From: Scyliorhinus canicula
Taxonomy: Eukaryota
Reading direction: 5' to 3'
Length of the DNA: 64,000 nucleotides
NCBI RefSeq assembly: GCF_902713615.1
Contig: NC_052171.1
Span: 7,963,209-8,027,208, forward strand
A program made the position numbers and the translations under genes. This document shows, one piece after another, positions 30,679-60,287 of this stretch; the first letter of the stretch is position 1; every line of letters begins with the position of its first letter. The notes under the pieces were generated by a model. The model had not been told where the DNA came from and did no database searches. It was given only the letters and a program-made list of their open reading frames with translations.

Positions 30679-30829
30679 GTGCGTAACTCTTAGTGCCTGC
30701 CGTTATATAGAGGCGTACCAGAGTGACCCTTTCCAGGCAGAATCGTCTTCAAAGGCAAGCCCCAAGCAGGCACCTACCCCACCCACTCCTCCCATCCCCC
30801 AGGAGGACATGAGCTCCCTCCCTCGAGCA

Positions 30830-31571: not shown

Positions 31572-31789
31572 CTGCGAGGGGGGGGGGGGGGGGGGGAGAA
31601 GAGAAAAACAATCAGGGTCTCAGTGGGCAGGTAATACACCGGAGATCACAATCCCGACACACCCCATCACCTCACACACACACACACACACACACACCAA
31701 CGACCCGCTCCCGGACGCTCAGGTTGGATTGTACCAAGATCACTTGACCCCGATCGCATTACAGACTTGATTCTAACACGGGTAAGATC

Positions 31790-32960: not shown

Positions 32961-33238
32961 AACCAGTGGTGCAGGTCAAAGGTCAGTGAACAACAGCGAG
33001 AGGGTCAGCACAGTCCAACCAGCAGCTATATCTCACCAGCTGACCTACTCCGCATTTGCAGTGTTTGCTGATGGGAGTTCCTTTAGCTGAAGCTTTAGTT
33101 TGTTTTGTTTTGGAGTTTAGATGTAACACCACAGTGTGGCCTGCTCCAGGATATTCTGCGTATTCCTGAAGGTGATCGGAATGGACAGAGTTTGTGCAAG
33201 AACCGGGCGCCACTGCTCATCAACGAGCAGCAGTATTA

Positions 33239-33696
33239 GGGACTGGATTCTCCATTTCAGGGATTATGTCTCCACGCCGTCATGAAAACTGTGGCGTCAA
33301 ACTTAAGGCCCCTTATTCACAGCCCTGCAGGGGGCCGTCATGAAGCTCACGGCTCCAGCTGCCGATGCGCCCCCCCCCCCCCCCCCCCCGCCCCGCACTT
33401 CCGGGTCAGAGGCAGCCGCTGTGCTCCATGGCGGACTCGGACTGCGGAGCTGGACCGCGTTAGTAGTTCGATCCATGCCGTCGGGGTGGAGAATAACGGG
33501 GTGGGCCTCTGGCAATGGCTGTAGGTGGGGGATAGGCGGTGCGGCATACCCCCCAGGTACGCCGCTTTTCGGGGGGCCGGAGAATCGAACCGGCGCCGGA
33601 CCCGCTTCCATGCGTGGAGATGGATTCTCTCCCCCCCCCCCCCCCCCGCACCGGACGCGATTTCGGAGTCAGGTGTGGGTGTGGAGAATCCATCCC
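33239..33696. mobile_element. MITE-like non-autonomous DNA element
   Basis: Terminal inverted repeats gggactggattctcc / ggagaatccatccc; GC-rich interior; TSD unclear. Confidence 0.6.
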
Positions 33697-33920
33697 CAGG
33701 AATTTGGACAGGTTAGCCAGTGGGGGCGGGCAATGCCAGTGGTCTGGGAGCGGGGACCCAGCCTCAGCTGTGGCGATACAGACCCCATTTCATCGGAGGC
33801 CAATGTGTGCCAATCCTCGGAGCTGGTTTAGTTAACAGTGGCAGCACCGACGCTGTTTGAACAGCGGAGACAAGAGTTGTGCGCTGGGAGGTCAGGAAGG
33901 ATAAGAGGGGACATACTGAC

Positions 33921-34242
33921 CCGTCACAGTGAGTTTTCACCAGGTCCAGCAGGCTCAGAGTGGGGATGTCCAGGTTCAGCTCCTTCACCAGCTGCTGGTA
34001 GACTGTTGAGAAAAGAGTGGGCTCCACGTGAAGGAGGGAGCAGATGGTGCTCATGGTCAGGGGCCAGTTGTGCTGGCGACAGGCGACGTGAACACAGCAG
34101 CCCACCAGGGCTTCCTTCTTCTCCAGAGTGACGTGCAGGAAGCTCGGATGCTCATAGGCCCTCAGGTAGAGTTCGCTGGCCGTGTCCTCCACGACGGGGC
34201 GCACACGGAGAATCCGGCAGAGGTCACGGACTCGCATCTGAC
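33921..34242 (-). CDS. BRF2: BRF2 exon (cyclin fold 1)
   Basis: cag|GT...GG|gtcagt; 322 nt; RVRDLCRIL...KKEALVGCCVHVACRQHNWPLTM. Confidence 0.95.
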
Positions 34243-34539
34243 CTGAGCGACGGGCGGGGGGGGTGAGAGAGAAGGGGGGGAGAGAGAGAGGGGGTGTGTG
34301 TGAGAGAGAGAGGGGGAAAGAGAGAGGGAGTGAGAGAGAGACAGAGAGTGAGTCACAACCGGAGTCACCGAGGGGAGAAGGATTACTTTAGGGACCTGGC
34401 TGCAGGCGATATTATACTAAAAGCAATATTGAACAGCATCTTGCATTCAAGTCAACACGGGGGGGGGGGGGGGGGGGGGGGGGCACGGGTCAGCCGCAAG
34501 GAGGGAGGGTTGGCCATAGGGTCGGCACTGGGGGGGGGG

Positions 34540-35115
34540 GGTACTGAGGGAGGGGCGGCATCGAAGGTATGTCCTTGGTCTCGCAGGGTAGACATCGAGA
34601 CCAAGGTTCGGCAAGGAGGGAGAACTGGCATCGAGGGTGCGTCCGTGCTGTTGGAGGGTGGGCAGGGAGGGAGGGCTGGCATCGAGGGTGAGTCCATGCT
34701 GTTGGAGGATGCGTCCATGCTGTTGGAGGGTGGGCAGGGCAGGGAGGGCTGGCATCGAGGGTGCGTCCATGCTGTTGGAGGGTGGGCAGGGAGGGAGGGC
34801 TGGCATCGTGGGTGAGTCCATACTGTTGGAGGGTGGGTCCATGCTGGTGGAGGGTGGGCAGGGAGGGCTGGCATCGAGGGTGCGTCCATGCTGTTGGAGG
34901 GTGGGCAGGGAGGGCTGGCATCGAGGGTGCGTCCATGCTGTTGGAGGGTGCGTCCATGCTGTTGGAGGGTGGGCAGGGAGGGAGGGCTGGCATCGAGGGT
35001 GCGTCCATGCTGTTGGAGGGTGGGCAGGGAGGGAGGGCTGGCATCGAGGGTGTGTCCAAGCTGTTGGAGGGTGGGCAGCAAAGGAGGACCAGCATCGGGG
35101 GTGGACCATGCTGTC
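34540..35115 (+). repeat. ~47-51-bp G-rich minisatellite followed by a DeuSINE-like body
   Basis: Unit gagggtgcgtccatgctgttggagggtgggcagggagggagggctggcatc. Confidence 0.9.
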
Positions 35116-35535
35116 AGAGGATCAGCACCGAGGGAATTGCATTGACGGAGGTGCTGGGTTTTAAATGAGACTTCAAACAGAGGCCGTGTGTGCATTCTCA
35201 GGAGGGCTTAAAAGATCCCCTGGTATTATTTGAAGAACATGGAAGTTCTCCGTTCACTCATCAATATTCTACCCTCCAACAACATTATTAAACTGCTCAT
35301 TCTTCTATTTGTGCACGCACTAACCGACTGCTGTATTTTCCACATTACAGAAACAACTATAACTTAGAAAAATCCTGAGGTCGTGGAGGAATGAGAGAAC
35401 TGCACGACTATTAATCCACAAAAATTTCAAAATTCCTTTTTGGGAATGAACATGCATATTTTGTGAATCATGGCAATTATTTGTGGTGGAGTTGTGAGGA
35501 ACATTGGTTGAGACGGTGGTGTCAATAAACACGGA

Positions 35536-36225
35536 GGGTAGCATGGTGGCGCAGTGGGTTAGCGCTGCTGCCTCACGGCGCCGGGGACAACGGGTTCGAT
35601 CCCGTCCCCGGGTCACTGTCCGTGTGGAATTTGCACGTTCTCCCCGTGTCTGCGTGGGTCTCACCCCCACAACCCAAATATGTGCAGGGTAGGTGGATTG
35701 GCCACGCTAAATTGCCTCTTGAGTGGGAAAAATTAATTGGGTACTCTAAATTTTAAAAATAAACAACCACTCTGGTCTCAGCTATCAATCCATCTGCCTC
35801 AAGGGCTAACCACAGACTTCGCATAACCACTCTTTCTCCGTATGGAGTGCAATCCGGAGCTTTTTAAATCGGCTACTTGATGTGTCGAGAATTACTCCAT
35901 TGTCTTGAGGGAAGTGGGTGGTGTGGTTTAATCGCGCCTTCAAGGCCAGAGATTGAAGCACGAGACCCGTTACTATACCAGCTGGGGCCGGCACATGGTT
36001 AGCACTGCTGCCTCACGGCGCTGAGAACCCCGGTTCAATCCCAGCCCCGGCGCGGAGAACCCCGGTTCAATCCCAGCCCCGGGTCACTGTCCGTATGGAG
36101 TTTACACATTCTACCCGTGTTTGTGTGGGTCTCATCCCCACAATCCAAAAAGATGTGCAGGGTAGGTGGATGGGCCACGTTAAATTGCCCCTTAATTGAA
36201 AATAAAATAATTGGGTACTCTAAAT
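35536..36225 (+). mobile_element. Two HE1-like SINEs (35536-35755, 35985-36225)
   Basis: tRNA head plus core; the second has a duplicated B-box segment. Confidence 0.8.
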
Positions 36226-36329
36226 TTAGTTAAATAAAATACCAGCGTGCGCAAAGCATCGCCCACCTGCATCAGAACTCTGCTTGAGTGCTTCCTGCAT
36301 TTTCTGCCGCCACTAATCAAGGATCTTAC

Positions 36330-36389
36330 CTTGTATCTGATTACGACAGGGCTTTTTCACCTCTGCTGTGCTCTCGCTGTATCTCACTG
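36330..36389 (-). CDS. BRF2: BRF2 60-nt exon (not in ORF track)
   Basis: cacag|CA GTG...CAA G|gtaag; (A)VRYSESTAEVKKPCRNQIQ(G); phase 1-1 bridges the flanking exons. Confidence 0.88.
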
Positions 36390-36928
36390 CTGTGGAGAAG
36401 GAGTGCAAATAGTACAGTTTAACATTGAGACAAGCCATGCTGCTTAAGTTGTGTGTAGTACAGGTTCAGCACTCGAACCACACTTACAGCACTCGAACCA
36501 CACTTGTTCTCCAAAACAGCCAGAGTGTGGCGACTGGGGGATTTTCACAGTAACTTCATTGCAGTGTGTGGAAACCTAAAATGGGCATCTAGAGCTGGGA
36601 TACCTGACATAAAAAATTTTAAGTGTCCCATCAAAATTGCTGCAGGTACCTCATTAATTCAGTCAGCAGACAAGTGGCCCCTTGAAAGTTGATTACATTG
36701 TCTGGAATTTAATCGATTTCCTGAGATCACCCTCCCTTTTGTATTGTGACACACACACCTTTTGTCAATAACAGCATCACTGAGAGCAATGACGTCAGCC
36801 GATCACCTCAGCTTTTCTGTTGCTAATATACTTATCACTATAGAATTACCGCAGAATGCATTGACGTCATCTGATCACCTCTCCTTTGTATCAAAATTAT
36901 ACCTTTGTCTTAGTCTAAGCCCAGTAAG

Positions 36929-37130
36929 AAGTCTTACAACACCAGGTTAAAGTCCAACCGGTTTGTTTCAAACATTAGCTTTCGGAGCACTGCTCCTTCC
37001 TCAGGTGAATGAAGAGGTATGTTCCAGAAACATATATATAGACTGATTCAAAGATGCCAGACAATGCTTGGAATGTGAGCATTTGTAGGTAATCAAGTCT
37101 TTCCAGATCCAGAGATAGGGGTAGTCTCAG
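36929..37130. mobile_element. Penelope-like terminal fragment (second copy at 14879-14960)
   Basis: Shared acaacaccaggttaaagtccaac...agctttcggagc...ctccttcctcaggtga; family call from memory. Confidence 0.5.
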
Positions 37131-37244
37131 CCAACAGCAAGGCTCAGAAATTATCGATGTTACTATCTGTAGAGGGATGTTTTTTTTTTAATATGCATCC
37201 TTTTGTGTGTCAGAGTGTGTCCGGCTGCGACCTTTTTTTTTTTA

Positions 37245-37576
37245 AGAACAGTACAGCACAGAACAGGCCCTTCGGCCCTCAATGTTGTGCCGAGCAATGA
37301 TCACCCTACTCAAGCCCACGTATCCACCCTATACCAGTAACCCAACAACCCCCGTTAATATTATTTTTTAGGACACTAAGGACAATTTAGCCTGGCCAAT
37401 CCACCTAACCCGCACATCTTTGGACTGTGGGAGGAAACCGGAGCACCCGGAGGAAACCCACGCACACACGGGGAGGACGTGCAGACTCCGCACAGACAGT
37501 GCCCCAGCCGGGAATCGAACCTGGGACCCTGGAGCTGTGAAGCATTGATGCTAACCACCATGCTACCGTGCTGCCC
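37245..37576 (-). mobile_element. Full-length HE1/V-type SINE
   Basis: Reverse complement of the 50181 and 54877 copies. Confidence 0.85.
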
Positions 37577-37735
37577 ACTTTGATTGACGTGGTCATTCTC
37601 TTTGTGCAAGTAAAACTTAATAAACTTAAATGTGTTGTTATCTGATACATTTTCAGTCTAAAAGTCTTACTCGGATGTCAAAGTTTTCCGCAAGTGTTAA
37701 TGTAAGCCCTTTGCGTGGGTTTCGCCCCAACAACC

Positions 37736-38683
37736 TGTAGCCATGCTGGCCACGCAAAATGGACACTGAGCCAAAGTAAAATGGAAGACAGAAGGAAAAG
37801 CCTGTTTAGTGAGAGCAGACAGTCTGCTCTCAACTAATTAGCATTTTGCAAGCAGCAAACCAGTTTCTGGCCAGGTGCAAGATCTCCAAGCCAAAGGTGT
37901 TAATGGCAAAGCGCTTAGCATTCTGATGAGGCAGCCCAGATCCAGGCACGAACAATGGCAACATTTCCATCTCAATGTAACACTTGATTGGTTGCGCAGA
38001 CAGGATGGCACCAAAGTAACGAATATCGAAACCACCCCCCAACACCGAGGAAGGCCCTCGCATTGGAGGATTTCGAAGGTAACCGTTTGGAAACGCTCCA
38101 ATCGGTACCGAAAGGTAGAGCCCGCCTATAAGGGGGCAAGGACATTAGAGAGGGGTATAAAGGCAAATTCCCCATCTAGCCCGGTCTGTTAAACCCGTGC
38201 TCCGGCCCTGATAGACATCTTGCATCCTGACTCCAGCCGTTGAGCACCAGCCGCCGAAACCGTAAGTTCAACGCTCGCTACGCGATCCAAGTCCACTAGA
38301 CCCCCAGTACCAGAACGCTTGCTGAAGGCTGCAGTACAAGACCAGGACGAAGGCCTCGTTCTCTGACCTTGCCTGTTCCTGTTAGATAAGTATTCTGATC
38401 ACTTAAGTTTAGTTATAGCTTAGTCTCTTAGTGTGTGCATGAGTATTTATTATAACTGTATAATAAATATTGATCGTTTGAACCTTACTGATCGGTGTAT
38501 CGTCTTTATTACTTTGAACTTGACCTTGGAATACTTGTGACGGTGTCTATACGGCACCTGGCGACTCCAGAGCTGAATAAATACATAGAACAGAGCCTAG
38601 TAGTGTTAAGCACACGTCGAACACGGAGGCGTGTTAATACACTCCAATAAACGCGTTTTACAACCACAGTAAAACGTGCAACA
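37736..38683 (+). mobile_element. Solo LTR (948 bp), Gypsy/ERV-type
   Basis: TGTAGC...GCAACA ends; perfect 4-bp TSD aacc; splits a SINE; internal CCAAT, TATAAA and AATAAA. Confidence 0.85.
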
Positions 38684-38856
38684 AACCCAAAAAGGTGTGC
38701 AGGCTAGGTAGATTGGCCACGCTAAATTGCCCCTTAATTGGAAAAAAAAAATTAATTGGGTACACTAAATTTATTTAAAAAAAGAAAAAATGTAAGCCTA
38801 CTTGTGACGCTAATAAAGATTTTTTTTGTACTCCTTTTTCATATTTTCATAAACCA

Positions 38857-39040
38857 GGGGCTGGTTTAGCTCACTTGGCTAAATCGCTGGCTTTTAAAGC
38901 AGACCAAGCAGGCCAGCAGCACGGTTCGATTCCCGTACCAGCCTCCCCGAACAGGCGCCGGAATGTGGCGACTAGGGGCTTTTCACAGTAACTTCATTGA
39001 AGCCTACTCGTGACAATAAGTGATTTTCATTTTCATTTCA
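38857..39040 (+). mobile_element. Second tRNA-derived SINE family
   Basis: ggggctggtttagctca...ggttcgattcccgtacc...ttcattttcatttca; reverse copies at 6072, 11065 and 42413. Confidence 0.8.
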
Positions 39041-39902
39041 TATTTTCCTCCAAAGTTACATCCAACAATAATCAGGAACGAATGTAATGTCAATCCCCAT
39101 ATCAAAAGCAACGATCCCGTTCTCCCACAAAACCCCAGACATTAGCCCTCATGTTAACATAAACAAATGGGAAAAAGGAATCAGGAATCACCCATAGTCA
39201 CCATTAACACACACCGCCCCCTCTTCCCCCCACCTAATGTTCAACGTGATCCAATTCTCAAAAGTGCATAATAACGCCCATGAATTGTAGAACCCCTCCA
39301 TCCTTCCCCTCAGTTCAAATTTGACCCTTTCAAGCGTCAAGAATTCCAGCCACGCCAGGGCACAGGGTGGAGAGGTTGATCTCCACCCTAACAGGATCCA
39401 CCTTCAGGCGATCAACGAGGCAAAGGCTACAACATCTGCCCCGTTTCCAACCCCGGCTGGTCCGACACCCCGAATGTGGCCTCCCGAGGGCCCGGGTCCA
39501 GTTTCACGTGCACCACTTTAGAGATTACCCTAAACACCTCCTTCCAGTAATCCTCCAGCTTTGGACAGGACCAAAACATATGAATGTGGTTTACGTGCGC
39601 CCCACCACCCCAACATTCACACACATCTTCTACCCCCTCAAAGAGCCGGCTCATCCTTGCCCTCGTGAGGTGTGCTCTATACACCTCTAATAAAGATGAA
39701 CCGGGAGCGAATCCTCCACACATCCCGCCGACTGCGACGTGCGACGATGACACCATAGGGCCGGGGGGGGGGGGGGGGGGGGAAGCCAGCAGGCGCCCCG
39801 TGCCGCCTTCGTGTGGGGGTGCCGAGGGCAGCGGGAAGGTGCAGTCGTTCCCCCCTCCAAAAAAAATGAGGAGGGGGGCCAAGAGGCGAGGAGGGTCCGT
39901 AC

Positions 39903-40074
39903 CTTGGGAGAAGCATTCCTCGGAGCGGGTGGACGTGAGCACCCCCTCCGTCAGCAGGAAGCCGCAGTCGGTGCACACCAGGTGGCTCTGGCTGTAGTGG
40001 GAATCCTCCTCCACGTGAGAGGAGCCACATTCTGGGCAGCTGCCTCTTCCAGACATCTTCTGGGATGCTTGACC
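39903..40074 (-). CDS. BRF2: BRF2 Zn-ribbon exon (conserved ATG at 40056; acceptor at 40074)
   Basis: [32 protein letters not shown] (CxxC...CxxC); donor G|gtacgg; strong polypyrimidine acceptor 18 nt upstream of the ATG. CDS from 40056 is 1278 nt, 425 aa. Confidence 0.93.
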
Positions 40075-40389
40075 CTGCAAGAAGAGAGAGAGGGGGGAAA
40101 AAAAACAACATTGAAAAAAAAGACTGGGACCACAAAAATATTGAGCATGGCATATCAAGCAATTTAGTTGCATATCTCCCCTCCTGTCTTCACCCAGCCC
40201 CCTGACACACACAAACAGTGAGTTTGCACATTGCTGTGACTCCAAGTTCTGAATGAAGAAGAAGCAGCAAAGGCGCCACTGACCCTGCCTGCAGCACCTA
40301 AATTTACGTTCTGCACGCCTGCAAACACAGGACGTGGTTACCTTGGGCGTAAGGAGGGGAGGACAACCCATTCTCCCAGGCCTGGACCT

Positions 40390-40900
40390 CCCCTCTGGTC
40401 AAGATGGCGGCCGACGGCTCGCCCCGCACAAGGATGGCGGGTATCTCTGCCCCCCTATAAAAATGGCGGCGGTGCCTTCTCCTCCCCTCGCCAATCTGAC
40501 GGCCGCTCATTTACCCCTCACCAAGATGGCGTCTCCCCCCCCCCAACCACACACACACTTTCTCTCTCTCCTCCCAATCCGCATCCAAAGATGGCGACGC
40601 TGCCGCCTCCGCCCCTCACAAAGATGGCACCCCCTCTCTCTCCAGTCCCACTCACTCAAAGATGGCGACGGGGCCGCCTCCGCCCCTCACAAAGATGGCC
40701 GAATCGTCCCCTTCCCCAACATGGCGCCGGGCCAGAAGCCCCCCCCTCCCCCTTACCATCCGGCGGCACGGAGCGGACGTGATTGCGTAATGGCCAGGCC
40801 CGGAAGCCGGGTGCTGGGCCTGCTGTCGGCGGCGAGGAGCGGGAGGCGCCTGTGGAGCCGCGGCGCCTGCGTCCAGGGCGAGGCCGAAGACATGAGTAAG
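40390..40900. promoter_or_regulatory. CpG-rich bidirectional promoter BRF2/DUSP11 with YY1-like cluster and ETS motif
   Basis: CpG dense; nine ANATGGC motifs between 40401 and 40729; CCGGAAG at 40800; divergent first exons. Confidence 0.75.
40757..40759 (-). CDS. BRF2: Putative BRF2 exon 1, with only an ATG as coding sequence
   Basis: The minus strand reads gccgccggATG|gtaagg; splicing to 40074 gives in-frame [12 protein letters not shown]. Confidence 0.55.
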
Positions 40901-40917
40901 AACAAGATACCGGATAG
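40892..40917 (+). CDS. DUSP11: DUSP11 exon 1 (in-frame upstream ATG at 40790)
   Basis: ATG AGT AAG AAC AAG ATA CCG GAT AG|gtgaga; the IPDR-W motif begins the PIR1/capping-enzyme triphosphatase domain. Confidence 0.85.
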
Positions 40918-41009: not shown

Positions 41010-41085
41010 ATGGGAGAACTACTCTGCGGTGGGGCTCAGGCTGCCGGGGACCAGGTTCATCGCCTTCAAAGTCCCATTGAAAAAG
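41010..41085 (+). CDS. DUSP11: DUSP11 exon 2
   Basis: tgtag|A...AAG|gtacgg; WENYSAVGLRLPGTRFIAFKVPLKK. Confidence 0.93.
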
Positions 41086-42969: not shown

Positions 42970-43101
42970 ATGTTCGAGAAACAGTTGCAACCGGGCAAAT
43001 TCTTCTCGCCCCCTGACCTCCTGAGACAGGTCCAGGAACAGAGTGAGGAGTTGGGAAAAATCATCGACCTCACCTTTACGAAGCGGTATTATGATTCCAA
43101 G
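42970..43101 (+). CDS. DUSP11: DUSP11 exon 3
   Basis: ttcag|ATG...AAG|gtaaca; FSPPDL...ELGKIIDLTFTKRYY. Confidence 0.93.
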
Positions 43102-43867: not shown

Positions 43868-43991
43868 GAGTTGCCGAAGGATTTGGTTTATGAGAAGATT
43901 TTCACCGCCGGCCATGAAGTGCCAAGTGGAAAAAACATTTTGACATTCAAAAAAGCTGTGCGCAGCTTCCTGTCGGGTAACCTGGACAACG
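43868..43991 (+). CDS. DUSP11: DUSP11 exon 4
   Basis: tgcag|GAG...G|gtaagc; ELPKDLVYEKIFTAGHEVP...FKKAVRSFL. Confidence 0.93.
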
Positions 43992-44713: not shown

Positions 44714-45872
44714 CAGTACTGTGCACCCTCAGTACTGACCCTCTGACAGTGCGGCACTCCCTCAGTACTGACCCTCTGACAGTGCAGCACTCCCTCAGTA
44801 CTGACCCTCTGATAGTGCGGCACTCCCTCAGTACTGACCCTCTGACAGTGCGGCACTCCCTCAGTACTGACCCTCTGACAGTGCAGCACTCCCTCAGTAC
44901 TGACCTCTCTGACAGTGTGCAGCACTCCCTCAGTACTGACCCTCTGACAGTGCGGCACTCCCTCAGTACTGACCCTCTGACAGTGCAGCACTCCCTCAGT
45001 ACTGACCCCCTGACAGTGCAGCACTCCCTCAGTACTGACCCTCTGACAGTGCAGCACTCCCTCAGTACTGACCCTCTGACAGTGCAGCACTCCCTCAGTA
45101 CTGACCCTCTGACAGTGCGGCACTCCCTCAGTACTGACCCTCTGACAGTGCGGCACTCCCTCAGTACTGACCCTCTGACAGTGCAGCACTCCCTCAGTAC
45201 TGACCCTCTGACAGTGCGGCACTCCCTCAGTACTGACCCTCTGACAGTGCGGCACTCCCTCAGTACTGACCCTCTGACAGTGCGGCACTCCCTCAGTACT
45301 GACCCTCTGACAGTGCGGCACTCCCTCAGTACTGACCCTCTGACAGTGCGGCACTCCCTCAGTACTGACCCTCTGACAGTGCAGCACTCCCTCAGTACTG
45401 ACCCTCTGACAGTGCAGCACTCCCTCAGTACTGACCCTCTGACAGTGCAGCACTGCCTCAGTACTGACCCTCTGACAGTGCAGCACTCCCTCAGTACTGA
45501 CCATCTGACAGTACAGCACTCCCTCACTACTGACCCTCTGACAGTGCATCACTCCCTCAGTACTGACCCTCTGACAGTGCAGCACTCCCTCAGTACTGAC
45601 CCTCTGACAGTGCAGCACTCCCTCAGTACTGACCCTCTGACAGTACAGCACTCCCTCACTACTGACCCTCTGACAGTGATCATTCCCTCAGTACTGATCC
45701 TCTGACAGTGCGGCACTCCCTCACTACTGACCCTCTGACAGTGCATCACTCCCTCACTACTGACCCTCTGACAGTGCATCATTCCCTCAGTACTGATCCT
45801 CTGACAGTGCGGCACTCCCTCACTACTGACCCTCTGACAGTGCATCACTCCCTCAGTACTGACCCTCTGACA
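44714..45872 (-). repeat. 33-bp minisatellite, reverse orientation (~35 copies)
   Basis: Reverse complement of the 15546 unit; Deu-like body at 44500-44710. Confidence 0.96.
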
Positions 45873-46013: not shown

Positions 46014-46074
46014 ATAAACTGGTTGGAGTTCACTGCACTCACGGAGTTAATCGGACTGGCTATCTAATTTGCAG
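46014..46074 (+). CDS. DUSP11: DUSP11 exon 5, catalytic P-loop
   Basis: tgtag|AT...AG|gtatgt; [19 protein letters not shown] matches the HCxxxxxR RNA-triphosphatase signature HCTHGxNRTG. Confidence 0.96.
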
Positions 46075-46663: not shown

Positions 46664-46710
46664 GTACCTGATCGACGTGGATGGGATGGACCCTCGCAAT
46701 GCAATCGATT
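46664..46710 (+). CDS. DUSP11: DUSP11 exon 6
   Basis: ttcag|G...T|gtaagt; YLIDVDGMDPRNAID. Confidence 0.92.
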
Positions 46711-46793: not shown

Positions 46794-46869
46794 TGTTCAA
46801 TAAATCCAGAGGACATCCGATAGAGAGACCGAACTACATACAGGATCTGCTGCAAGGGCAAAACAGGAG
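46794..46869 (+). CDS. DUSP11: DUSP11 exon 7
   Basis: tccag|TG...AG|gtaagg; FNKSRGHPIERPNYIQDL. Confidence 0.93.
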
Positions 46870-48194: not shown

Positions 48195-48284
48195 CAATAA
48201 TGGAACTGGTGTACCTGCTCCATGCCCAGGAACGAGGCAGAAGGAACATCACAGGCCGCAGGCTGTGTTCAAGCAGAGACAGAG
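48195..48284 (+). CDS. DUSP11: DUSP11 exon 8 (variable tail)
   Basis: cgcag|C...AG|gtgtgt; 90 nt, phase 2-2, open; NNGTGVPAPCPGTRQKEHHRPQAVFKQRQ. No homology support. Confidence 0.65.
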
Positions 48285-50560: not shown

Positions 50561-50934
50561 CCACATCCATCTGCCTGCAGCTTGCCTTCTCTCCAGACTC
50601 TCGAGCTCCTCACTCCTGCTTGCCACTTCCCTCAATGACTCCCCTGCCCGACACTCCCCTCCCGCCCACCACCCTCTCACTGAGGGGGCAGGTCAGCAAG
50701 TGGGGCGGGAGGGGGTAGAGGGGTACGGACAGAGTGGCTCAGCGATAGGGAAGTGGCGGGGTTGGAGTGGGTTAGGGAGGAGGGAGCGCTCCAAGATGGC
50801 AATATTGTGGGGGGAGAAGTACTGGGGAAAATTGTACAGTCGCAGGGATGGTCTGCACAAGTCATCCAATGTTGGAGGAATCGGACTGAACCAGTAGTCT
50901 ACTGTTATAGGGGAATAGTGAGGATGCTCTGCCA

Positions 50935-52013
50935 GTGCTGAGGGAGTGCCGCACTGTCAGAGGGTCAGTACTGAGGGAGTGCCGCACTGTCAGAGGGTCA
51001 GTACTGAGGGAGTGCCGCACTGTCAGAGGGTCAGTACTGAGGGAGTGCCGCACTGTCAGAGGGTCAGTACTGAGGGAGTGCCGCACTGTCAGAGGGTCAG
51101 TACTGAGGGAGTGCGCACTGTCAGAGGGTCAGTACTGAGGGAGTGCCGCACTGTCAGAGGGTCAGTACTGAGGGAGTGCCGCACTGTCAGAGGGTCAGTA
51201 CTGAGGGAGTGCTGCACTGTCAGAGGGTCAGTACTGAGGGAGTGCTGCACTGTCAGAGGGTCAGTACTGAGGGGAGTGCCGCACTGTCAGAGGGTCAGCT
51301 ACTGAGGGAGTGCAGCACTATCACAGGGTCAGTACTGAGAGAGTGCCGCACTGTCAGAGGGTCTGTACTGAGGGAGTGCTGCACTGTCAGAGGGTCAGTA
51401 CTGAGGGAGTGCGCACTGTCAGAGGGTCAGTACTGAGGGAGTGCTGCACTGTCAGAGGGTCAGTACTGAGGGAGTGCTGCACTGTCAGAGGGTCAGTACT
51501 GAGGGAGTGCTGCACTGTCAGAGGGTCAGTACTGAGGGAACGCTGCACTGTCAGAGGGTCAGTACTGAGGGAGCGCTGCTCTGTCAGAGGGTCAGTACTG
51601 AGGGAGTGCCGCACTGTCAGAGGGTCAGTACTGAGGGAGTGCTGCACTGTCAGAGGGTCAGTACTGAGGGAGTGCCGCACTGTCAGAGGGTCAGTACTGA
51701 GGGAGTGCTGCACTGTCAGAGGGTCAGTACTGAGGGAGTGCTGCACTGTCAGAGGGTCAGTACTGAGGGAGTGCTGCTCTGTCAGAGGGTCAGTACTGAG
51801 GGAGTGCCGCACTGTCAGAGGGTCAGTACTGAGAGAGTGCCGCACTGTCAGAGGGTCAGTACTGAGGGAGTGCCGCACTGTCAGAGGGTCAGTACTGAGG
51901 GAGTGCCGCACTATCAGAGGGTCAGTACTGAAGGAGTGCAGCACTATCAGAGGGTCAGTACTGAAGGAGTGCAGCACTGTCAGAGGGTCAGTACTGAGGG
52001 AGGGCTGCACTGT
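50935..52013 (+). repeat. 33-bp minisatellite (~32 copies)
   Basis: Same unit as 15546; Deu-like tail at 52025-52170. Confidence 0.96.
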
Positions 52014-52354
52014 TGAGCACTACTGGAAGAAGAGAAGACAAGTTCTTTGCAATGTCCAGGCCAATATTTAACTCAACCAACACTTAAAACAAACGAACTG
52101 GCCAGTTTGGTCGGTGTGGTTTGTGGGATATTGCTGACGCACAATATTTACCTTCGTAACAGTATCTGCCTTTGGCCCATTGCAGTCAGCTGACAGGTTT
52201 AAAATGGAGGGACGTTGGTTTGCCGATGTTGGAAATGTTCCCTTCTCTGTGACACCTCGCCATATATTGTGCAGTTACTGGGAAATACAGCGATAGATTT
52301 TGACGGTGCTCCAGTATGTAATCTGTGAATAATGCAGTCACTTTTCTCTTGCAG

Positions 52355-53711
52355 ACCGTACCAATTGAAATGTCCCACTCGGAATGGCTATCGTGAGTTC
52401 AGCCAATCGGCCTGCCCAGCTCTGTCTGCTCAATCCTCCGGACAGCATCGCAATGGACGAAGGTTTGGGACTGGCGCTGTGCACCAATCAGTGCGTCAGA
52501 ATGGCAATGTCCAGCCATATTCCAACAATGAATACGGAACGGAGGAATTGTCCTGGAGGAGTGGTCAGCCCGCGGCCTCACGGTGGAGCGGTCAATCTGA
52601 AGCCTCACAGTGGAGCGGTCAGCCCGCGGCCTCACAGTGGAGCGGTCAGCCCGAAGCCTCACGGTGGAGCGGTCAGCCCGAAGCCTCACGGAGGAGCGGT
52701 CAGCCCGAAGCCTCACGGTGGAGCGGTCAGCCCGAAGCCTCACGGTGGAGCGGTCAGACCGCGGACACACAGTGGAGCGGTCAGACCGCGGCCGTGCGGT
52801 GGAGCGATCAGGCCGAAGCCTCACAGTGGAGCGGTCAGTCTGAGGCCTTGCGGTGGAGTGGTCAGCCCGCGGCCTCACAGAGGAGCGGTCAGCCCGAGTC
52901 CTCACAGTGGAGCGGTCAGCCCGAGTCCTCACAGTGGAGCGGTCAGCCCGAGTCCTCGCGGTGGAGCGGTCAGTCCGAGGCCTCACGATGGAGTGGTCAG
53001 CCCGCGGCCTCACAGTGGAGCGGTCAGCCCGAGTCCTCACGGTGGAGCGGTCAATCCGAGGCCTCACAATGGAGCGGTCAGCCCACGGCCTCACGGTGGA
53101 GCGGTCAGTCCAAGGCCTCACGGTGGAGCGGTCAGTCCGAAGCCTCACAGCAGAGCGGTCAGCCCGCGGCCTCACAGCAGAGCGGTCAGCCCGCGGCCTC
53201 ACAGTGGAGCGGTCAGCCCGCGGCCTCACAGCAGAGCGGTCAGCCCGCGGCCTCACAGCGGAGTGGTCAGCCCGCGGCCTCACAGTGGAGCGCTCAGCCC
53301 GCGGCCTCGCAGCGGAGCGGTCAGCCCGCGGCTTCACGGTGGAGCGGTCAGTCCAAGGCCTCACGGTGGAGCGGTCAGTCCGAAGCCTCTCAGCAGAGCG
53401 GTCAGCCCGCGGCCTCACAGTGGAGCGGTCAGCCCGCGGCCTCACAGCAGAGCGGTCAGCCCGCGGCCTCACAGTGGAGCGGTCAGCCCGCGGCCTCACA
53501 GTGGAGCGGTCAGCCCGCGGCCTCACAGTGGAGCGGTCAGCCCGCGGCCTCACAGTGGAGCGGTCAGCCCGCGGCCTCACAGCGGAGCGGTCAGCCCCAA
53601 CCCCCCTGGCAGAGTTATCAGCCACCACAAGCTGGACGGGGCAGGAGAGACTGGAAAGTGAACGCTGGCGGTCAGGACAGACTGAGTGCACATCGACAAT
53701 GGGACAACTGA
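52355..53711 (+). CDS. DUSP11: DUSP11 terminal exon with 9-aa tandem repeat
   Basis: cttttctcttgcag|A CCG in phase 2 matches the exon 7 and exon 8 donors; 1357 nt to TGA; total CDS 1989 nt (662 aa from 40892). Confidence 0.7.
52558..53600 (+). repeat. 27-bp coding minisatellite (~38-39 copies)
   Basis: Unit TGGAGCGGTCAGCCCGCGGCCTCACAG, with no indels. Confidence 0.95.
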
Positions 53712-54707
53712 AGTGGAAACAGGAAAGATTGTAGTCCTATAATTTGCTGATGTGTGAACAGATTTCACAATGCTTTCTTTTATAAATATTGATTCTAAAA
53801 TATGGTTCACCATGAAACTGTGCAGCTAACTGGGAGCTGGCTTGTGCCTCATCTGTCAATGCCAAGCACTTGTTTCACCTTGCACATGAGGCTCCTCGCT
53901 CATTGCCTGACACCACGTCACAATGAGCGAGTCTTTTAACATTTTATATTCTGCTTCTGAGGTTGATGCACAACCTGACCGGCGGTTTTACCCAGGCCAG
54001 ACGGTCGAAAAATCTTAAATATTATGTTACGTTAGCCCTGCAGCCTCACGGCGCCAAGGACCCGGTTAGATCCTGGCTCTGGGTCACTGTCCGTGAGGAG
54101 TTTGTACATTCTCCCCGTGTCTGTGTGGGTCTCACCCCCACAATCCAAAAGATGTGCAGGTTAGGTGGATTGGCCACGCTAAATTGCCCCTTACTTGGGT
54201 ACTCTAAATTTGTTTTAAAAAAAGATGTATTTGAAGCTGGATTTCATTTTAAATTGTTCCTTTTAAATTATTTAATTCCCATCCCGTTCAGCCACCTTTG
54301 AACCGTGCTCTGCCCAAATCCACTGACCCCGGCTATTTGGCGGTGGAATGTGTTTCAGGATCAGTTCCTGATCGCTGGGCTCTGGTGCCATTGCGGAGGT
54401 CAGGCTTGGCTCCGTGCCTTGCCCGTGCAATGTGCCAGCCTGCCGCCTCTCTCTGTCTTGTCTCATGGGGTAAGCACTGTCGGCCAGTGCCTCCGTGAGA
54501 TAAGCCTGTCCTTATTCTCTGCTCGTCAGTTACCTGAACCAAAAGTGGCCTCTTATTGCACCAGCTTCTCCCAGACCTCTCCGCATTGACACGAGGCAAA
54601 GTTCAGCCCTTTTTTTTTAAACAAACAAATTGTCTTAAAAATGTTCTTTTTTAAAGAATTTTCAGAATTGTTTTATCTTCACACACTGCGCAAAATCTTA
54701 ATTCAGA

Positions 54708-56621: not shown

Positions 56622-59600
56622 TGCTCAGGGCAGCTCCAGAACCTACCCAGCTCAAGGGCAGCGCCAGAACCTCACTGGGTCAGGGCAGATCCAGAACCTT
56701 CCTAGCTCAGGGCAGCTCCAGAACCTCCCGATCAGGGCAGCTCTAGAACCCACAACCTCCCAGCTCAGGGCCGCTCCAGAACATACCCCGCTCAGGGAAG
56801 ATTCAGAACCTCCCTAGCTCAGGGCAGATCCAGACCCCCCCCCCCCCCCCCCCCCCGTGGCTCAGGGCAGCTCTAGTTCCTGACCCTCCCCAGCTCAGGG
56901 AAACTACAGAACCCAGACTCTTCCCAGCTCAGGGCAGTTCCAGAACCTCCCCAGCGCAGGGCAGCTGCAGAACCTCCCTAGCTCAGGCCAGATCTAGAAC
57001 CTCAGCTCAGGGCAGCTCCAGAACCTCCCCAGCTCAGGGCAGTGCCAGAACCTCCCCAGCTCAGGGCAGCTCCAGAAACTCTCCAGCTCAGGGCAGCTCT
57101 AGAAACTCCCCAGCTCAGGGCAGCTCCAGAACCTTCCCAGCTCAGGGCAGCTCCAGAACCTCCCCAGCTCAGGGCAGCACCAGAACCTCCCCAGCTCAGG
57201 GCAGCTCCAGAACACAGACCCTCCCCAGCTCAGGGCAGCTCCAGAATCTCCCCATCTCAGGGCAGCTCTAGAACCCAGAACCTTCCTAGCCCTGGGCAGC
57301 TCCAGAACCTCACTAGCTCAGGGCAGATCCAGAACCTCCCCAGCTCAGGGCAACTTCAGAACCTCCCTAGCTCAGGGAAGATCCAGAACCTCCCCAGTTC
57401 AGGGCAGCTCCAGAACCTCCCCAGCTCAGGGAAGCTCCAGAACCTTCCTCGCTCAGGGCAGATCCAGAACCTCCCTAGCTCAGGGCAGATCAAGAACCTC
57501 CCCAGCTCAGGGCAGCTCCAGCCACCCTCCCCCAGCTCAGGGCATTTCCAGAACCTCCCCAGCTCATGACAGCTCTAGAACCCAGACCATCCCCAGCTCA
57601 GAGCAGCTCCAGGACCTCCCCAGCTCTGGGCAGCTCCAGACCCCCTCCCCCAGTTCAGGGCAGCTCCAGAACCTCCCCAACTCAGGGCAGCTCTAGAACC
57701 CAGAGCCTCCCCCAGCTCGGCAGCTCTAGAACCAAGACCCCCGGCAGCTCCAGAACCTCCCTAGCTCAGGGCAGATTCAGAACCTCCCCAGCTCAGAGCA
57801 GCTCCAGAACCTCCCCAGCTCAGGGCAGCTCTAGAACCCAGAGCCTCCCCAGCTCAGAGCAGCTCCAGAACCTCCCCAGCGCAGGGCAGCTGCAGAACCT
57901 CCCTAGCTCAGGTCGGATCTAGAACCTCAGCTCAGGGCAGCTCCAGAACCTCCCCAGCTCAGGGCAGTGCCAGAACCTCCCCAGCTCAGGGCAGTGCCAG
58001 AACCTCCCCAGCTCAGGGCAGTGCCAGAACCTCCCCAGCTCAGGGCAGCTCCAGGAACTCTCCAGCTCAGGGCAGCTCTAGAAACTCCCCAGCTCAGGGC
58101 AGCTCCAGAACCTCCCCAGCTCAGGGCAGCTCCAGAACCTCCCCAGCTCATGGCAGCACCAGAACCTCCCCAGCTCAGGGCAGCTCCAGAACACAGACCC
58201 TCCCCAGCTCAGGGCAGCTCCAGAATCTCCCCATCTCAGGGCAGCTCTAGAACCCAGAACCTTCCTAGCCCTGGGCAGCTCCAGAACCTCACTAGCTCAG
58301 GGCAGATCCAGAACCTCCCCAGCTCAGGGCAGATCCAGAACCTCCCCAGTTCAGGGCAGCTCCAGAACCTCCCCAGCTCAGGGAAGCTCCAGAACCTTCC
58401 TCGCTCACGGCAGATCCAGAACCTCCCTAGCTCAGGGCAGATCAAGAACCTCCCCAGCTCAGGGCAGCTCCAGACACCTTCCCCCAGCTCAGGGCATTTC
58501 CAGAACCTCCCCAGCTCATGACAGCTCTAGAACCCAGACCCTCCCCAGCTCAGAGCAGCTTCAGGACCTCCCCAGCTCTGGGCAGCTCCAGACCCCCTCC
58601 CCCAGTTCAGGGCAGCTCCAGAACCTCCCCAACTCAGGGCAGCTCTAGAACCCAGAGCCTCCCCCAGCTCAGGGCAGCTCTAGAACCAAGACCCCCGGCA
58701 GCTCCAGAACCTCCCTAGCTCAGGGCAGATTCAGAACCTCCCCAGCTCAGGGCAGCTCCAGAACCTCCCCAGCTCAAAGAAGCTCCAGACCCCCCCCCCC
58801 CCAGTTCAGGGCAGACCCAGAACCTCCCTAGCTCAGGGCAGCTCCAGAACCTCCCTAGCTCAGGGCAGCTCTAGAACCCAGAATCTACCCAGCTCAGGGC
58901 AGCTCCAGAACCCAGACCCTCCCCAGTTCAGGGCAGCTCCAGAACCTCCCCAGCTCAGGACAGCTCCAGATCCTCCCTAGCTCAGGTCAGCTCCAGAACC
59001 TCCCCAGCTCTAGGACCCAGAACCCCCCCCCCCCCAGCTCAGGGCAGCTCCAGAACCTCCCCAGCTCCGGGGAGCTCTAGAACCCAAAACGTCCCCAGCT
59101 CAGGGCAGCTCTAGAACCCAGACCCTCCCCAGCTCAGAGCAGCTCCAGAACCTCCCCAGCTCAGGGCAGCTCTAGAACCCAGAGCCTCCCCAGCTCAGGG
59201 CAGCTCCAGAACCCAGACTCCCCCCCCCCCCCAGTTCAGGGCAGCTCCAGAACCTCCCCAGCTCAGGGCAGCTCCAGAACCTCCCCAGCTCCAGGACTTC
59301 CCTAGCTCAGGTCAGCTCCAGAACCTCCCCAGCTCAGGGCAGCTCTAGAACCGAACTCAGAGCAGCTCCAGAACCTCCTCAGCTCAGGGCAGCTCTAGAA
59401 CCCAGAGCCTCCCCAGCTCACGGCACCTCCAGAACCCAGACTCCCCCCAGTTCAGGGCAGCTCCAGAACCTCCCTAGCTCAGGGCAGCTCCAGAACCTCC
59501 CCAGCTCAGGGCAGCTCCAGAACCCAGACCCTCCCCAGCTCAGGGCAGCTCCAGAACCTCCCCAGCTTAGGGCAGCTCTAAAACCCAGACCCTCCCCAGC

Positions 59601-60285
59601 TCAGAGCAGCTCCAGAACCTCCCCAGCTCAGGGCAGCTCTAGAACCCAGAGCCTCCCCAGCTCAGGCCAGCTTCAGAACCCAGACTCCCCCCAGTTCAGG
59701 GCAGCTTCAGAACCTCCCTAGCTCAGGGCAGCTCCAGAACCTCCCCAGCTCAGGGCAGCTCCAGAACCCAGACCCTCCCCAGCTCAGGGCAGCTCCAGAA
59801 CCTCCCCAGCTTAGGGCAGCTCTAGAACCCAGACCCTCCCCAGCTCAGAGCAGCTCCAGAACCTCCCCAGCTCAGGGCAGCTCTAGAACCCAGAGCCTCC
59901 CCAGCTCAGGCCAGCTTCAGAACCCAGACTCCCCCCCCCAGTTCAGGGCAGCTTCAGAACCTCCCTAGCTCAGGGCAGCTCCAGAACCTCCCCAGCTCAG
60001 GGCAGCTCCAAAACCTAGACCCTCCCCAGCTCAGGGCAGCTCCAGAACCTCCCCAGCTCAGGGCACCTCCAGGACCTCCCTGGCTCAGGTCAGCTCCAGA
60101 ACCTCCCCAGCTCAGGGCAGCTCTAGAACCCAAAACCATCCCAGCTCAGGGTAGCTCCAGAACCTCCCCAGCTCAGGACAGCTCCAAAACCTCCCCAGCT
60201 CAGGGCAGCTCTAGAACCCAGAACATCCCCAGCTCGGGGCAGCTCTAGAACTCAGAACCTCCCCAGCTCAGGGCAGCTCCAGAAC
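56622..60285 (+). repeat. 27/34-bp minisatellite, 3.7 kb
   Basis: Unit cagctcagggcagctccagaacctcccc with ~7-bp insertion variants; ~950-bp internal duplication. Confidence 0.95.
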
Positions 60286-60287
60286 CA

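What the first reader, a model, noticed from the sequence alone, without database searches (positions are those of the whole stretch)
52355..53711. DUSP11 carries a ~38-39 x 9-aa WSGQPAASQ repeat tail
Seen: the terminal exon has a good acceptor in the right phase. It encodes ~350 aa of indel-free 27-bp units, whereas the intronic arrays do contain indels. The Trp position varies among TGG/CGG/AGG/CAG but never TAG/TGA, and Gln codons never become stops, which is consistent with coding constraint. This roughly doubles the protein to 662 aa. Established: DUSP11 C-termini are disordered and variable, and regularly spaced aromatic residues in S/G/Q spacers can drive condensate formation. Inference: this is a lineage-specific low-complexity or WG-like docking tail on an RNA triphosphatase. 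Its many SQ motifs form a potential ATM/ATR/DNA-PK cluster.
Basis: partly seen in the sequence, partly recalled or inferred. Interest (0 to 1): 0.75.

Follow-up and report, generated by a model that had tools for sequence, protein, structure and literature searches.

The report
Shark DUSP11 tryptophan-repeat tail
The last exon of this shark's RNA-triphosphatase gene DUSP11 really does encode about 39 in-frame copies of a nine-residue tryptophan-containing unit; other sharks have the same tail in fewer copies, so it is an old, maintained but uncharacterised protein feature, and its function is still only inferred.

Summary
A 27-bp array of 39 units (52554-53606) has no register shift. It lies in the only frame that runs from the splice acceptor at 52355 to the stop at 53709-53711.

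Transcriptome contigs from three studies join cassette exon 48195-48284 directly to 52355. They leave the intron uncovered and run on into the array.

NCBI-annotated DUSP11 orthologues from seven other sharks (four orders) carry the same unit, W-[S/G]-G-Q-x-x-[A/S]-S, in the same frame. Copy number is about 7 to 29. The post-repeat C-terminus (...THxRWD) is conserved. Rays have 3-4 degenerate W-x8 units and the chimaera has none. The tail is therefore shark-wide, and this genome has the largest copy seen: half of a 696-aa (long) or 666-aa (short) protein.

The SQ cluster is not conserved. Other species have SR or SP at that position, and R/Q differ by a CGG/CAG change.

Function is inferred. 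The most likely role is a disordered, multivalent Trp docking or partitioning module, possibly Argonaute-hook-like. A tolerated, near-neutral coding minisatellite remains a serious rival.

The papers searched do not describe this tail. The scan had not noted it before; it holds only notes on other coding minisatellites in this genome.

The parts
40790..40917 (+). DUSP11 exon 1, with start codon ATG at 40790
   Evidence: tblastn to S. torazame DUSP11; GT-AG splice model
41010..41085 (+). Exon 2 (RWENYSAVGLRLPGTRFIAFKVPLKK)
42970..43101 (+). Exon 3
43868..43991 (+). Exon 4
46014..46074 (+). Exon 5, with the catalytic P-loop [11 protein letters not shown]
46664..46710 (+). Exon 6
46794..46869 (+). 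Exon 7. Its donor at 46869|gt leaves AG of a split codon.
48195..48284 (+). Cassette exon 7b, 30 codons (SNNGTGVP...FKQRQ). It is included in the RNA contigs and is absent from the 'X2' isoforms of the orthologues.
52355..53711 (+). Last coding exon, from the acceptor at 52355 to stop TGA at 53709-53711. The 3' UTR follows.
52355..52553 (+). Unique pre-repeat tail segment (PYQLKCPTRNGYREF...EELS), alignable across elasmobranchs
   Evidence: dN/dS 0.24-0.49
52554..53606 (+). 39 units of 27 bp (9 aa), consensus [Q/R]-W-S-G-Q-[P/S]-[A/E]-A-S. The 3' half is more uniform and contains a 243-bp (9-unit) block duplicated at 94.7% identity (53094-53336 and 53337-53579).
53607..53633 (+). Degenerate edge unit WQSYQPPQA, of the W-[Q/R]-S-Y-Q-P type that the sawshark orthologue repeats
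53634..53708 (+). Conserved Arg-rich C-terminus (GRGRRDWKVN...HRQWDN), in the same frame as the array. Every chondrichthyan orthologue examined ends in THxRWD.

Best explanation
The array is a real, transcribed, in-frame coding minisatellite in the last exon of the shark orthologue of DUSP11 (PIR1), the RNA 5'-tri/diphosphatase. It encodes about 351 residues of intrinsically disordered nonapeptides, [Q/R]-W-S-G-Q-[P/S]-[A/E]-A-S. These sit between a conserved pre-segment and the conserved arginine-rich C-terminus.

It grew by unit-wise and block-wise duplication from a short W-x8 periodic motif. That motif was already present in the elasmobranch ancestor (3-4 degenerate units in rays). The array has been re-homogenised and resized separately in each shark lineage: about 7 units in carpet sharks, 11 in the sawshark, 18 in S. 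torazame, 29 in Heptranchias and 39 here.

Most likely mechanism (inferred, not shown): regularly spaced Trp 'stickers' in a flexible S/G/Q/P/A spacer make a multivalent docking or partitioning module. The module would set where the phosphatase sits (nuclear retention, RNP bodies, partner complexes) and perhaps damp its activity. This would extend the known role of the mammalian C-terminal region in localisation.

My odds: coding and expressed, about 0.9. The peptide motif is under selection, about 0.65. Multivalent Trp docking or partitioning is the selected function, about 0.4.
For: RNA:
- Contigs of four transcriptome-like runs from four studies give no cover on intron 52014-52352 and full cover from the exon start.
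- In three of them the sequence just upstream of the exon is window 48253-48282. That is the junction 48284|52355 with GT..AG.
- One 954-nt contig runs 69 nt past 52557 into the array.
- 18 runs from 7 studies hold 66-77% of sampled 31-mers of 52330-53900. The unique flanks alone could give only about 30%.

Comparative:
- Orthologues of S. torazame, Heptranchias, Pristiophorus, Rhincodon, two Chiloscyllium species and Hemiscyllium carry the same-frame 9-aa unit and the conserved C-terminus.
- Consensus units differ at only 4-6 of 27 nt between orders. The differences include synonymous changes (CCC/CCG, TCA/TCC/TCG). Pro, Gln and the final Ser are kept; the Ser after Trp is Gly in Rhincodon.
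- The flanks on both sides have dN/dS of 0.2-0.66.

Register:
- 38 of 38 steps are exactly 27 nt.
- Five similar 27-bp arrays in introns elsewhere in this genome, and all six non-coding arrays tested in the window, have 1 to 36 off-register steps.

Within the array: Ser3 and Gln5 are 40/40 and vary only synonymously; Gly4 is 37/40.

Family: all 57 columns invariant across 25 vertebrate DUSP11 are kept, and the P-loop [10 protein letters not shown] is present.

Disorder: no Pfam family hits the tail. The AF2 model of the S. torazame orthologue has pLDDT 30-44 and no secondary structure from residue 220 onward.

Literature: in human DUSP11, residues 218-330 are needed for nuclear localisation and are dispensable for activity. 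Truncating them raises activity 1.5-2 fold (PMC5785229).
Against: - There is no protein-level evidence.
- Short-read contigs cannot show that whole transcripts carry all 39 units, or that none splice the array out.
- Trp is replaced by Q or R in 11 of 39 units, mostly in the youngest and most uniform 3' half. Single Trp residues are therefore dispensable.
- Within-array synonymous versus non-synonymous variant types (8 of 18 possible against 16 of 63) show only weak constraint.
- Copy number ranges five-fold among sharks with no known correlate.
- The genome is rich in minisatellites, including other coding ones. A mutational origin needs no function.
- No partner has been identified.
Confidence: 0.6

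Rival explanations
1. Tolerated, near-neutral coding minisatellite. A slippage-prone GC-rich 27-bp unit expands and contracts in a disordered linker. Selection only removes frameshifts and stops, so that the conserved C-terminal Arg-rich motif is still made. Neither the motif nor the copy number has a function of its own.
For: - The window holds 61 TRF rows and many minisatellites.
- Arrays of 27 bp that are 66-70% similar lie in introns elsewhere in the genome.
- The scan's notes list other coding minisatellites in this genome (unchecked).
- Copy number varies from 7 to 39 between sharks.
- Trp is lost in 11 of 39 units.
- The within-array syn/nonsyn contrast is weak.
- The array contains a recent 9-unit block duplication.
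Against: - The unit's peptide core, W-[S/G]-G-Q-P-x-[A/S]-S, is kept across four shark orders while the unique flanks diverge more. Unit pN is 0.14-0.20 against 0.19-0.34 in the flanks.
- Ser3 and Gln5 are invariant in 40 units and vary only synonymously.
- W-x8 spacing is already present in rays.
- Trp is strongly over-represented in the shark and ray tails (3-8% of tail residues).
Confidence: 0.3
2. Argonaute hook. The reiterated W-[S/G]-G units bind the Trp pockets of AGO or PIWI proteins, as the GW182/TNRC6 and plant NRPE1/SPT5L platforms do. This would tether the enzyme that makes 5'-monophosphate ends to the protein that loads them. It is a specific case of the docking model.
For: - Units read RWGGQ (a canonical WG) in Rhincodon and Chiloscyllium and W-S-G elsewhere. 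They sit in a disordered G/S/Q/P/E/A context with even spacing.
- DUSP11 promotes Argonaute association of 5'-triphosphorylated small RNAs (PMC5066614). Its nematode orthologue associates with Dicer/ERI complexes (PMC5785229).
- Metazoan AGOs have three evenly spaced Trp pockets that bind multivalent GW proteins (PMC12477606).
Against: - There is no binding evidence of any kind.
- Human DUSP11 is mainly nuclear, and its C-terminus is dispensable for miRNA 5' processing.
- The Pfam search of the tail found no family at all, so also no Ago_hook.
- Many Trp-rich disordered regions bind other partners.
Confidence: 0.15
3. SQ/TQ cluster domain. The tail is a substrate platform for ATM, ATR or DNA-PK.
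For: There are 23 SQ dipeptides in 351 residues here and 8 in S. torazame.
Against: - The position before Trp is R or P in other sharks. SQ counts there are 3, 1, 2 and 0.
- Q and R alternate through CGG/CAG, a CpG-type transition. SQ therefore looks like a by-product in catsharks.
Confidence: 0.05
4. The array is not translated as read: it is a UTR, another frame is used, or it is spliced out.
For: A second frame is open across the array (430 codons). Short-read contigs cannot span the array.
Against: - The observed junction fixes the phase at 52355.
- Only that frame reaches the conserved C-terminus.
- The same frame is annotated in seven other sharks.
- The other frame opens only after a stop just inside the exon and ends before the conserved C-terminus.
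Confidence: 0.03

Closest known systems
Mammalian DUSP11 / PIR1 C-terminal region (human residues about 218-330)
   Same: It is the same gene family and the same position, after the catalytic domain. Both are disordered and Trp/Arg/Pro-containing, and both end in an Arg-rich motif. The region affects nuclear localisation and mildly restrains activity (PMC5785229).
   Different: The mammalian tail is about 120 aa and is not a tandem array. The shark tail inserts 7-39 nonapeptide units (39 here, 351 aa) before the Arg-rich end.
Reiterated WG/GW Argonaute-binding platforms (GW182/TNRC6 ABD; plant NRPE1 and SPT5L)
   Same: Both are disordered and fast-evolving, with tandemly reiterated Trp flanked by G/S in polar spacers. 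Both show multivalency and a link to small-RNA pathways (PMC12477606; PMC2965232).
   Different: No AGO binding has been shown here. The unit here is a strict 9-mer on an enzyme, not on a scaffold protein. There is no sequence homology, and Pfam finds nothing on the tail.
Fission-yeast Spt5 CTD, tandem nonapeptide TPAWNSGSK
   Same: It is a Trp-containing nonapeptide (W-x-S-G against W-S-G here) repeated in tandem. It serves as a docking code for RNA 5'-end enzymes, including an RNA triphosphatase (PMC4274631, PMC4066402).
   Different: There the repeat is on the elongation factor and the triphosphatase reads it. Here the repeat is fused to the triphosphatase itself. The two are unrelated in descent, and the yeast enzyme belongs to a different fold family (own knowledge).
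FET-family (FUS/EWS/TAF15) SYGQ-rich low-complexity domains (own knowledge, not checked here)
   Same: Aromatic residues at regular spacing in an S/G/Q spacer. The sawshark unit (S-Y-Q-P) even uses Tyr. Both fit the sticker-spacer logic for condensates.
   Different: The sticker here is Trp, not Tyr. The units here form a perfect tandem array. No condensate data exist for this tail.

Membership tests
DUSP11 / PIR1 (atypical dual-specificity phosphatase, RNA 5'-triphosphatase) | Cys-phosphatase P-loop HCxxGxxR(S/T) | tested here: met
   [11 protein letters not shown] is encoded by exon 5, at residue 160 of the spliced model.
DUSP11 / PIR1 (atypical dual-specificity phosphatase, RNA 5'-triphosphatase) | Family-wide conserved residues of the catalytic domain | tested here: met
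   All 57 columns invariant in an alignment of 25 vertebrate DUSP11 are kept. The first 230 aa are 206/230 identical to S. torazame DUSP11.
DUSP11 / PIR1 (atypical dual-specificity phosphatase, RNA 5'-triphosphatase) | Pfam DSPc domain (PF00782) | tested here: met
   The match is on the 88%-identical orthologue P0121: E 8.5e-15, 55 bits against a cut-off of 33.5. The window's own spliced protein was not scanned, because it has no single reference.
DUSP11 / PIR1 (atypical dual-specificity phosphatase, RNA 5'-triphosphatase) | Orthology by gene neighbourhood | tested here: met
   A BRF2-like gene lies head-to-head upstream here, and also in S. torazame and C. plagiosum.
DUSP11 / PIR1 (atypical dual-specificity phosphatase, RNA 5'-triphosphatase) | RNA 5'-tri/diphosphatase activity | not testable with these tools
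   This needs an enzyme assay.
GW/WG Argonaute-hook platforms | Several Trp residues flanked by G/S in a disordered, polar, low-complexity region | tested here: met
   There are 28 W-S-G units here and W-G-G units in Rhincodon and Chiloscyllium. The orthologue model has low pLDDT and no secondary structure in the tail.
GW/WG Argonaute-hook platforms | Trp-dependent binding to the AGO PIWI-domain pockets | not testable with these tools
   This needs pull-down, ITC or a structure. See Tried and rejected.
GW/WG Argonaute-hook platforms | Match to the Pfam Ago_hook model | tested here: not met
   No Pfam family matches the tail at E <= 1. That model describes the TNRC6 hook only, so this does not exclude GW-like function.
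SQ/TQ cluster domain (ATM/ATR substrates) | Dense SQ/TQ dipeptides (own knowledge: at least 3 in 100 aa) | tested here: met
   There are 23 SQ in 351 aa in this species.
SQ/TQ cluster domain (ATM/ATR substrates) | Conservation of the SQ sites in orthologues | tested here: not met
   SQ counts in the other shark tails are 8, 3, 2, 1 and 0. The position is R or P there.

The most novel reading that the evidence does not exclude
The shark DUSP11 tail is a Trp-pocket docking platform of the Ago-hook type. It would physically couple removal of the RNA 5'-triphosphate to Argonaute/PIWI loading or to RNP condensates. Copy number would tune valency. The scattered Trp residues in other vertebrates' DUSP11 tails would be the unexpanded form of the same interaction. 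That would reveal an unrecognised direct link between DUSP11 and Argonaute.
Probability: 0.15. Interest if true: 0.8.

Novelty: new variant of a known kind. Interest (0 to 1): 0.45.

Why it matters
DUSP11 controls the 5'-triphosphate state of Pol III and viral RNAs. That state affects RIG-I sensing, XRN decay and Argonaute loading. How its disordered C-terminus works is poorly understood.

Sharks offer a natural series of 7 to 39 copies of a single Trp-centred motif from that tail, with proto-repeats in rays. This series points to the residues that matter: Trp spacing and the S/G-G-Q core. It also gives a ready reagent for finding the tail's partners.

It is also a clean, datable example of a coding minisatellite kept in frame for hundreds of millions of years (my estimate from shark phylogeny, not computed here) while its copy number changed freely.

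Tried and rejected
- Complex prediction of an AGO-clade MID-PIWI fragment (P0166:540-958, an unnamed AGO-clade representative, not a shark protein) with nine tail units (window:52905-53147) returned 'no answer'. The score was 0.00 and the controls were not run. The tool says disordered chains and peptides are untested in it. I count this neither for nor against binding.
- Pfam on the tail found no family.
- ESM Atlas look-alikes of the tail all scored under 0.8 and were unrelated low-complexity proteins.
- The within-array synonymous/non-synonymous count favours the coding frame only weakly: 44% of possible synonymous variant types are seen against about 25% of non-synonymous. Stop avoidance alone is also weak, since only 6 of 81 single changes make a stop.
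- The look-up of encoding contigs gave no DNA for S. torazame, C. plagiosum or Hemiscyllium because the files are too large. It found no record for the X2 isoforms. The codon-level comparison therefore rests on Heptranchias, Rhincodon and Amblyraja only.
- The AF2 model of the orthologue is poor overall (mean pLDDT 44.8, shallow alignment). It supports disorder of the tail only loosely.
- A second homologue search that allowed proteins up to 964 aa found no further long-tailed chondrichthyan DUSP11.
- The window's own annotated protein did not appear in any search.
- Paper searches for DUSP11 with catshark, shark, elasmobranch or chondrichthyan listed no paper that holds DUSP11.
- I considered whether the downstream 27-bp array at 56623-60286 (one frame reads SSGQLQNLP) is a copy of the coding unit. 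By hand the consensus units match at only about 11 of 27 positions, and that array has many indels and stops. I treat the likeness as chance or as very remote.
- I did not send read laying a stretch holding the long arrays, because the tool turns long repeats away. Read-through of the array and use of the 46869|52355 junction (short isoform) were therefore not tested.

Full report
**What is there.** The window comes from a 4.22-Gb genome. It carries a nine-exon DUSP11 gene on the + strand:
- 40790-40917
- 41010-41085
- 42970-43101
- 43868-43991
- 46014-46074
- 46664-46710
- 46794-46869
- cassette exon 48195-48284
- last exon 52355-53711

All junctions are GT-AG. The spliced protein is 696 aa with the cassette exon and 666 aa without it. 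Its first 290 residues are 88% identical to Scyliorhinus torazame DUSP11. It keeps the P-loop [11 protein letters not shown] and all 57 columns that are invariant in 25 vertebrate DUSP11 proteins. A BRF2-like gene lies head-to-head upstream, as in two other sharks. Identification as DUSP11 is secure.

**The observation.** TRF reports one array at 52558-53597: period 27, 38.5 copies, 87% matches, 0% indels. Read in codons, it is 39 units from 52554 to 53606 with consensus [Q/R]-W-S-G-Q-[P/S]-[A/E]-A-S. One degenerate unit (WQSYQPPQA) and 25 unique residues follow before TGA at 53709-53711. Counting that extra unit (40 in all), position 3 is Ser and position 5 is Gln in 40 of 40, Gly4 is 37/40 and Trp2 is 28/40. 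The non-Trp codons at the Trp position are AGG, CGG and CAG, never TAG or TGA. An anchor motif recurs at exactly 27 nt in all 38 steps. The protein length (666 or 696 aa, not 662) is a minor correction.

**Is it more than chance?** Openness and lack of indels are weak evidence by themselves.
- A second frame is open for 430 codons.
- GC-rich arrays in the orthologues are also open in several frames.
- TRF lists 0% indels for two intronic 33-bp arrays, and those also give long open frames.
- Within the array, 8 of 18 possible synonymous variant types are seen against about 16 of 63 non-synonymous. That leans the right way but is not decisive.

A better control is register. This genome holds five other 27-bp arrays that are 66-70% similar to the DUSP11 array. 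They lie on another chromosome, directly after a sulfotransferase-like exon. They have similar size (roughly 25-44 copies) and less substitution (90-92% matches in the three measured), yet each has 1-6 off-register steps, and their translations hop between frames and hit stops. The window's own non-coding arrays have 2 to 36 off-register steps. The DUSP11 array has more substitutions and no off-register step.

**RNA evidence.** Eighteen small, transcriptome-like runs of one organism, from seven studies, hold 66-77% of sampled 31-mers of 52330-53900. The unique flanks alone could give only about 30%. I laid contigs of four runs from four studies on the repeat-free stretch 52014-52557.
- None covers the intron (52014-52352).
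- All cover the exon from its first base.
- In three runs the contig sequence just upstream of the exon is a 30-mer that occurs once in the window, at 48253-48282.
- With the shared AG, this is the junction 48284|52355, flanked by gt...ag.
- One 954-nt contig continues 69 nt past 52557 into the array.

I did not lay the arrays themselves, because the tool turns long repeats away. Read-through of all 39 units and the 46869|52355 junction remain untested.

**Comparative evidence.** This is the strongest line. The last exon finds NCBI 'RNA/RNP complex-1-interacting phosphatase-like' proteins of S. torazame, Heptranchias perlo and Chiloscyllium punctatum. The catalytic domain adds Rhincodon, Pristiophorus, rays, a chimaera and bony vertebrates. 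Cluster members add C. plagiosum and Hemiscyllium.

Every shark has the same 9-aa unit in the same frame, and every chondrichthyan examined ends in ...THxRWD. Consensus unit and approximate copy number:

| Species | Consensus unit | Copies |
|---|---|---|
| Rhincodon | RWGGQPDAS | about 7 |
| Chiloscyllium / Hemiscyllium | RWGGQ-type | about 7 |
| Pristiophorus | W-R-S-Y-Q-P-E-S-S | about 11 |
| S. torazame | QWSGQSEAS | about 18 |
| Heptranchias | [P/R]WSGQPESS | about 29 |
| This window | [Q/R]WSGQ[P/S][A/E]AS | 39 |

Stingrays (Hypanus, Mobula) have three successive Trp-Trp gaps of exactly 9, the skate and the electric ray have one each, and the chimaera has none.

At the DNA level, consensus units of the window, Heptranchias and Rhincodon differ at 4-6 of 27 nt. 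The differences include synonymous changes (CCC/CCG, TCA/TCC/TCG) that keep Pro and the final Ser; the Ser after Trp is Gly (AGC/GGC) in Rhincodon. The unique flanks are more diverged (pN 0.19-0.34, pS 0.42-0.62 among the sharks) but still give dN/dS of 0.2-0.66.

The simplest history has four steps:
1. A short W-x8 motif was present in the elasmobranch ancestor.
2. It was amplified in sharks.
3. The array turned over by concerted evolution within each lineage.
4. It kept growing here, as shown by a 243-bp block duplicated at 94.7% identity and a very uniform 3' half.

The edge units (WRSGQPAAS at the start, WQSYQPPQA at the end) keep the older form with Trp first.

**What it probably does.** No Pfam family matches the tail. 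The Atlas search gives nothing useful. The AF2 model of the S. torazame orthologue has no secondary structure and pLDDT of 30-44 from residue 220 onward, although the model is poor overall. The tail is 24% Ser, 20% Gln, 16% Ala, 11% Gly, 9% Pro and 8% Trp. This is a flexible polar chain with a bulky aromatic residue every ninth position.

In human DUSP11 the equivalent region (218-330) is needed for nuclear localisation and is dispensable for catalysis. Removing it raises activity 1.5-2 fold (PMC5785229).

I therefore favour a multivalent Trp docking or partitioning module that sets where the enzyme sits and perhaps how active it is. This is inference, and I give it about 0.4.

A specific version is an Argonaute hook.
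- The carpet-shark units are canonical WG motifs.
- DUSP11 makes 5'-monophosphate ends that allow Argonaute association (PMC5066614).
- Its nematode orthologue works with Dicer/ERI complexes.
- Metazoan AGOs have three evenly spaced Trp pockets for multivalent GW proteins (PMC12477606).

I give this version about 0.15.

Another analogue is the fission-yeast Spt5 CTD. It is a tandem Trp nonapeptide (TPAWNSGSK) that an RNA triphosphatase and the capping guanylyltransferase read (PMC4274631, PMC4066402). This is a resemblance, not membership.

**What it probably is not.** The SQ-cluster idea fails on conservation. There are 23 SQ here and 8 in S. torazame, but only 3, 2, 1 and 0 in Heptranchias, Chiloscyllium, Rhincodon and Pristiophorus. 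In those species the residue before Trp is Arg or Pro. In the window, Gln and Arg alternate at that position through CAG/CGG.

**The serious rival.** The array may be a tolerated coding minisatellite in a repeat-prone genome, kept in frame only to preserve the C-terminus. In its favour:
- The window and the genome are full of minisatellites.
- The scan's unchecked notes list other coding minisatellites in this genome.
- Copy number varies five-fold between species.
- 11 of 39 Trp positions are lost, mainly in the youngest units.

Against it:
- The peptide core is kept across orders.
- Ser3 and Gln5 are invariant within the array.
- The 9-residue Trp spacing predates the expansion.

I give this rival about 0.3.

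**Novelty.** Orthologous proteins with the tail are already in NCBI as automatic predictions. Searches combining DUSP11 with shark, catshark, elasmobranch or chondrichthyan listed no paper that holds DUSP11. The DUSP11 review does not mention such repeats. I rate this a new variant of a known protein. It is well supported as a feature, its function is unknown, and the interest is moderate.

Noticed in passing
window 30800-40400 (- strand), next to DUSP11 exon 1 at 40790: A BRF2-like gene (TFIIB zinc ribbon [11 protein letters not shown]..., two cyclin-fold exons) lies head-to-head with DUSP11. The same neighbour is found in S. torazame and C. plagiosum. BRF2 drives type-3 Pol III promoters, and DUSP11 trims the 5'-triphosphate of Pol III transcripts, so a shared bidirectional promoter could co-regulate them.
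   Followed up: partly
window 44726-45872 and 50933-52013: Two 1.1-kb arrays of the same 33-bp unit lie in opposite orientation (32/33 match after reverse complement) in the introns flanking exons 5 to 7b. In the pre-mRNA they could pair and loop out those exons, giving exon skipping or circular RNA. The same unit also forms arrays at 15546-18766 and, more diverged, at 22626-29935.
   Followed up: partly
L005-L009 (G000:C20, 91.29-92.34 Mb): Five 27-bp minisatellites (roughly 25-44 copies) are 66-70% similar to the DUSP11 coding array and share the core GCCTCACGGTGGAG. Three of them (L005, L006, L008) sit directly after a sulfotransferase-like exon ending ...ATYPKSG. They carry frame-shifting indels and stops. 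I did not resolve whether they share descent with the DUSP11 unit or only a repeat-prone core.
   Followed up: partly
window 56623-60286: A large degenerate 27/54-bp array (about 115 copies, 12% indels) lies 3 kb downstream of DUSP11. One frame reads SSGQLQNLP. The likeness to the coding unit is weak (about 11 of 27 nt by hand).
   Followed up: no
P0046 (Tachyglossus aculeatus DUSP11), tail: The echidna DUSP11 tail has three copies of a roughly 14-aa Trp unit (PWG.PA..RDFH). This is an independent small tandem repeat of a WG motif in the same region of the protein.
   Followed up: no
L010 (G000:C1:147482946-147486767): An intronless PIWI-clade copy with nearly the whole Piwi domain in one stretch but interrupted by stops. 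It is probably a processed pseudogene.
   Followed up: no
L002 about 15000-15080 (Rhincodon typus DUSP11 array): The whale-shark array contains a short run of N in the public record. After it the unit register is shifted by one residue relative to the annotated protein. I left it as it is.
   Followed up: no
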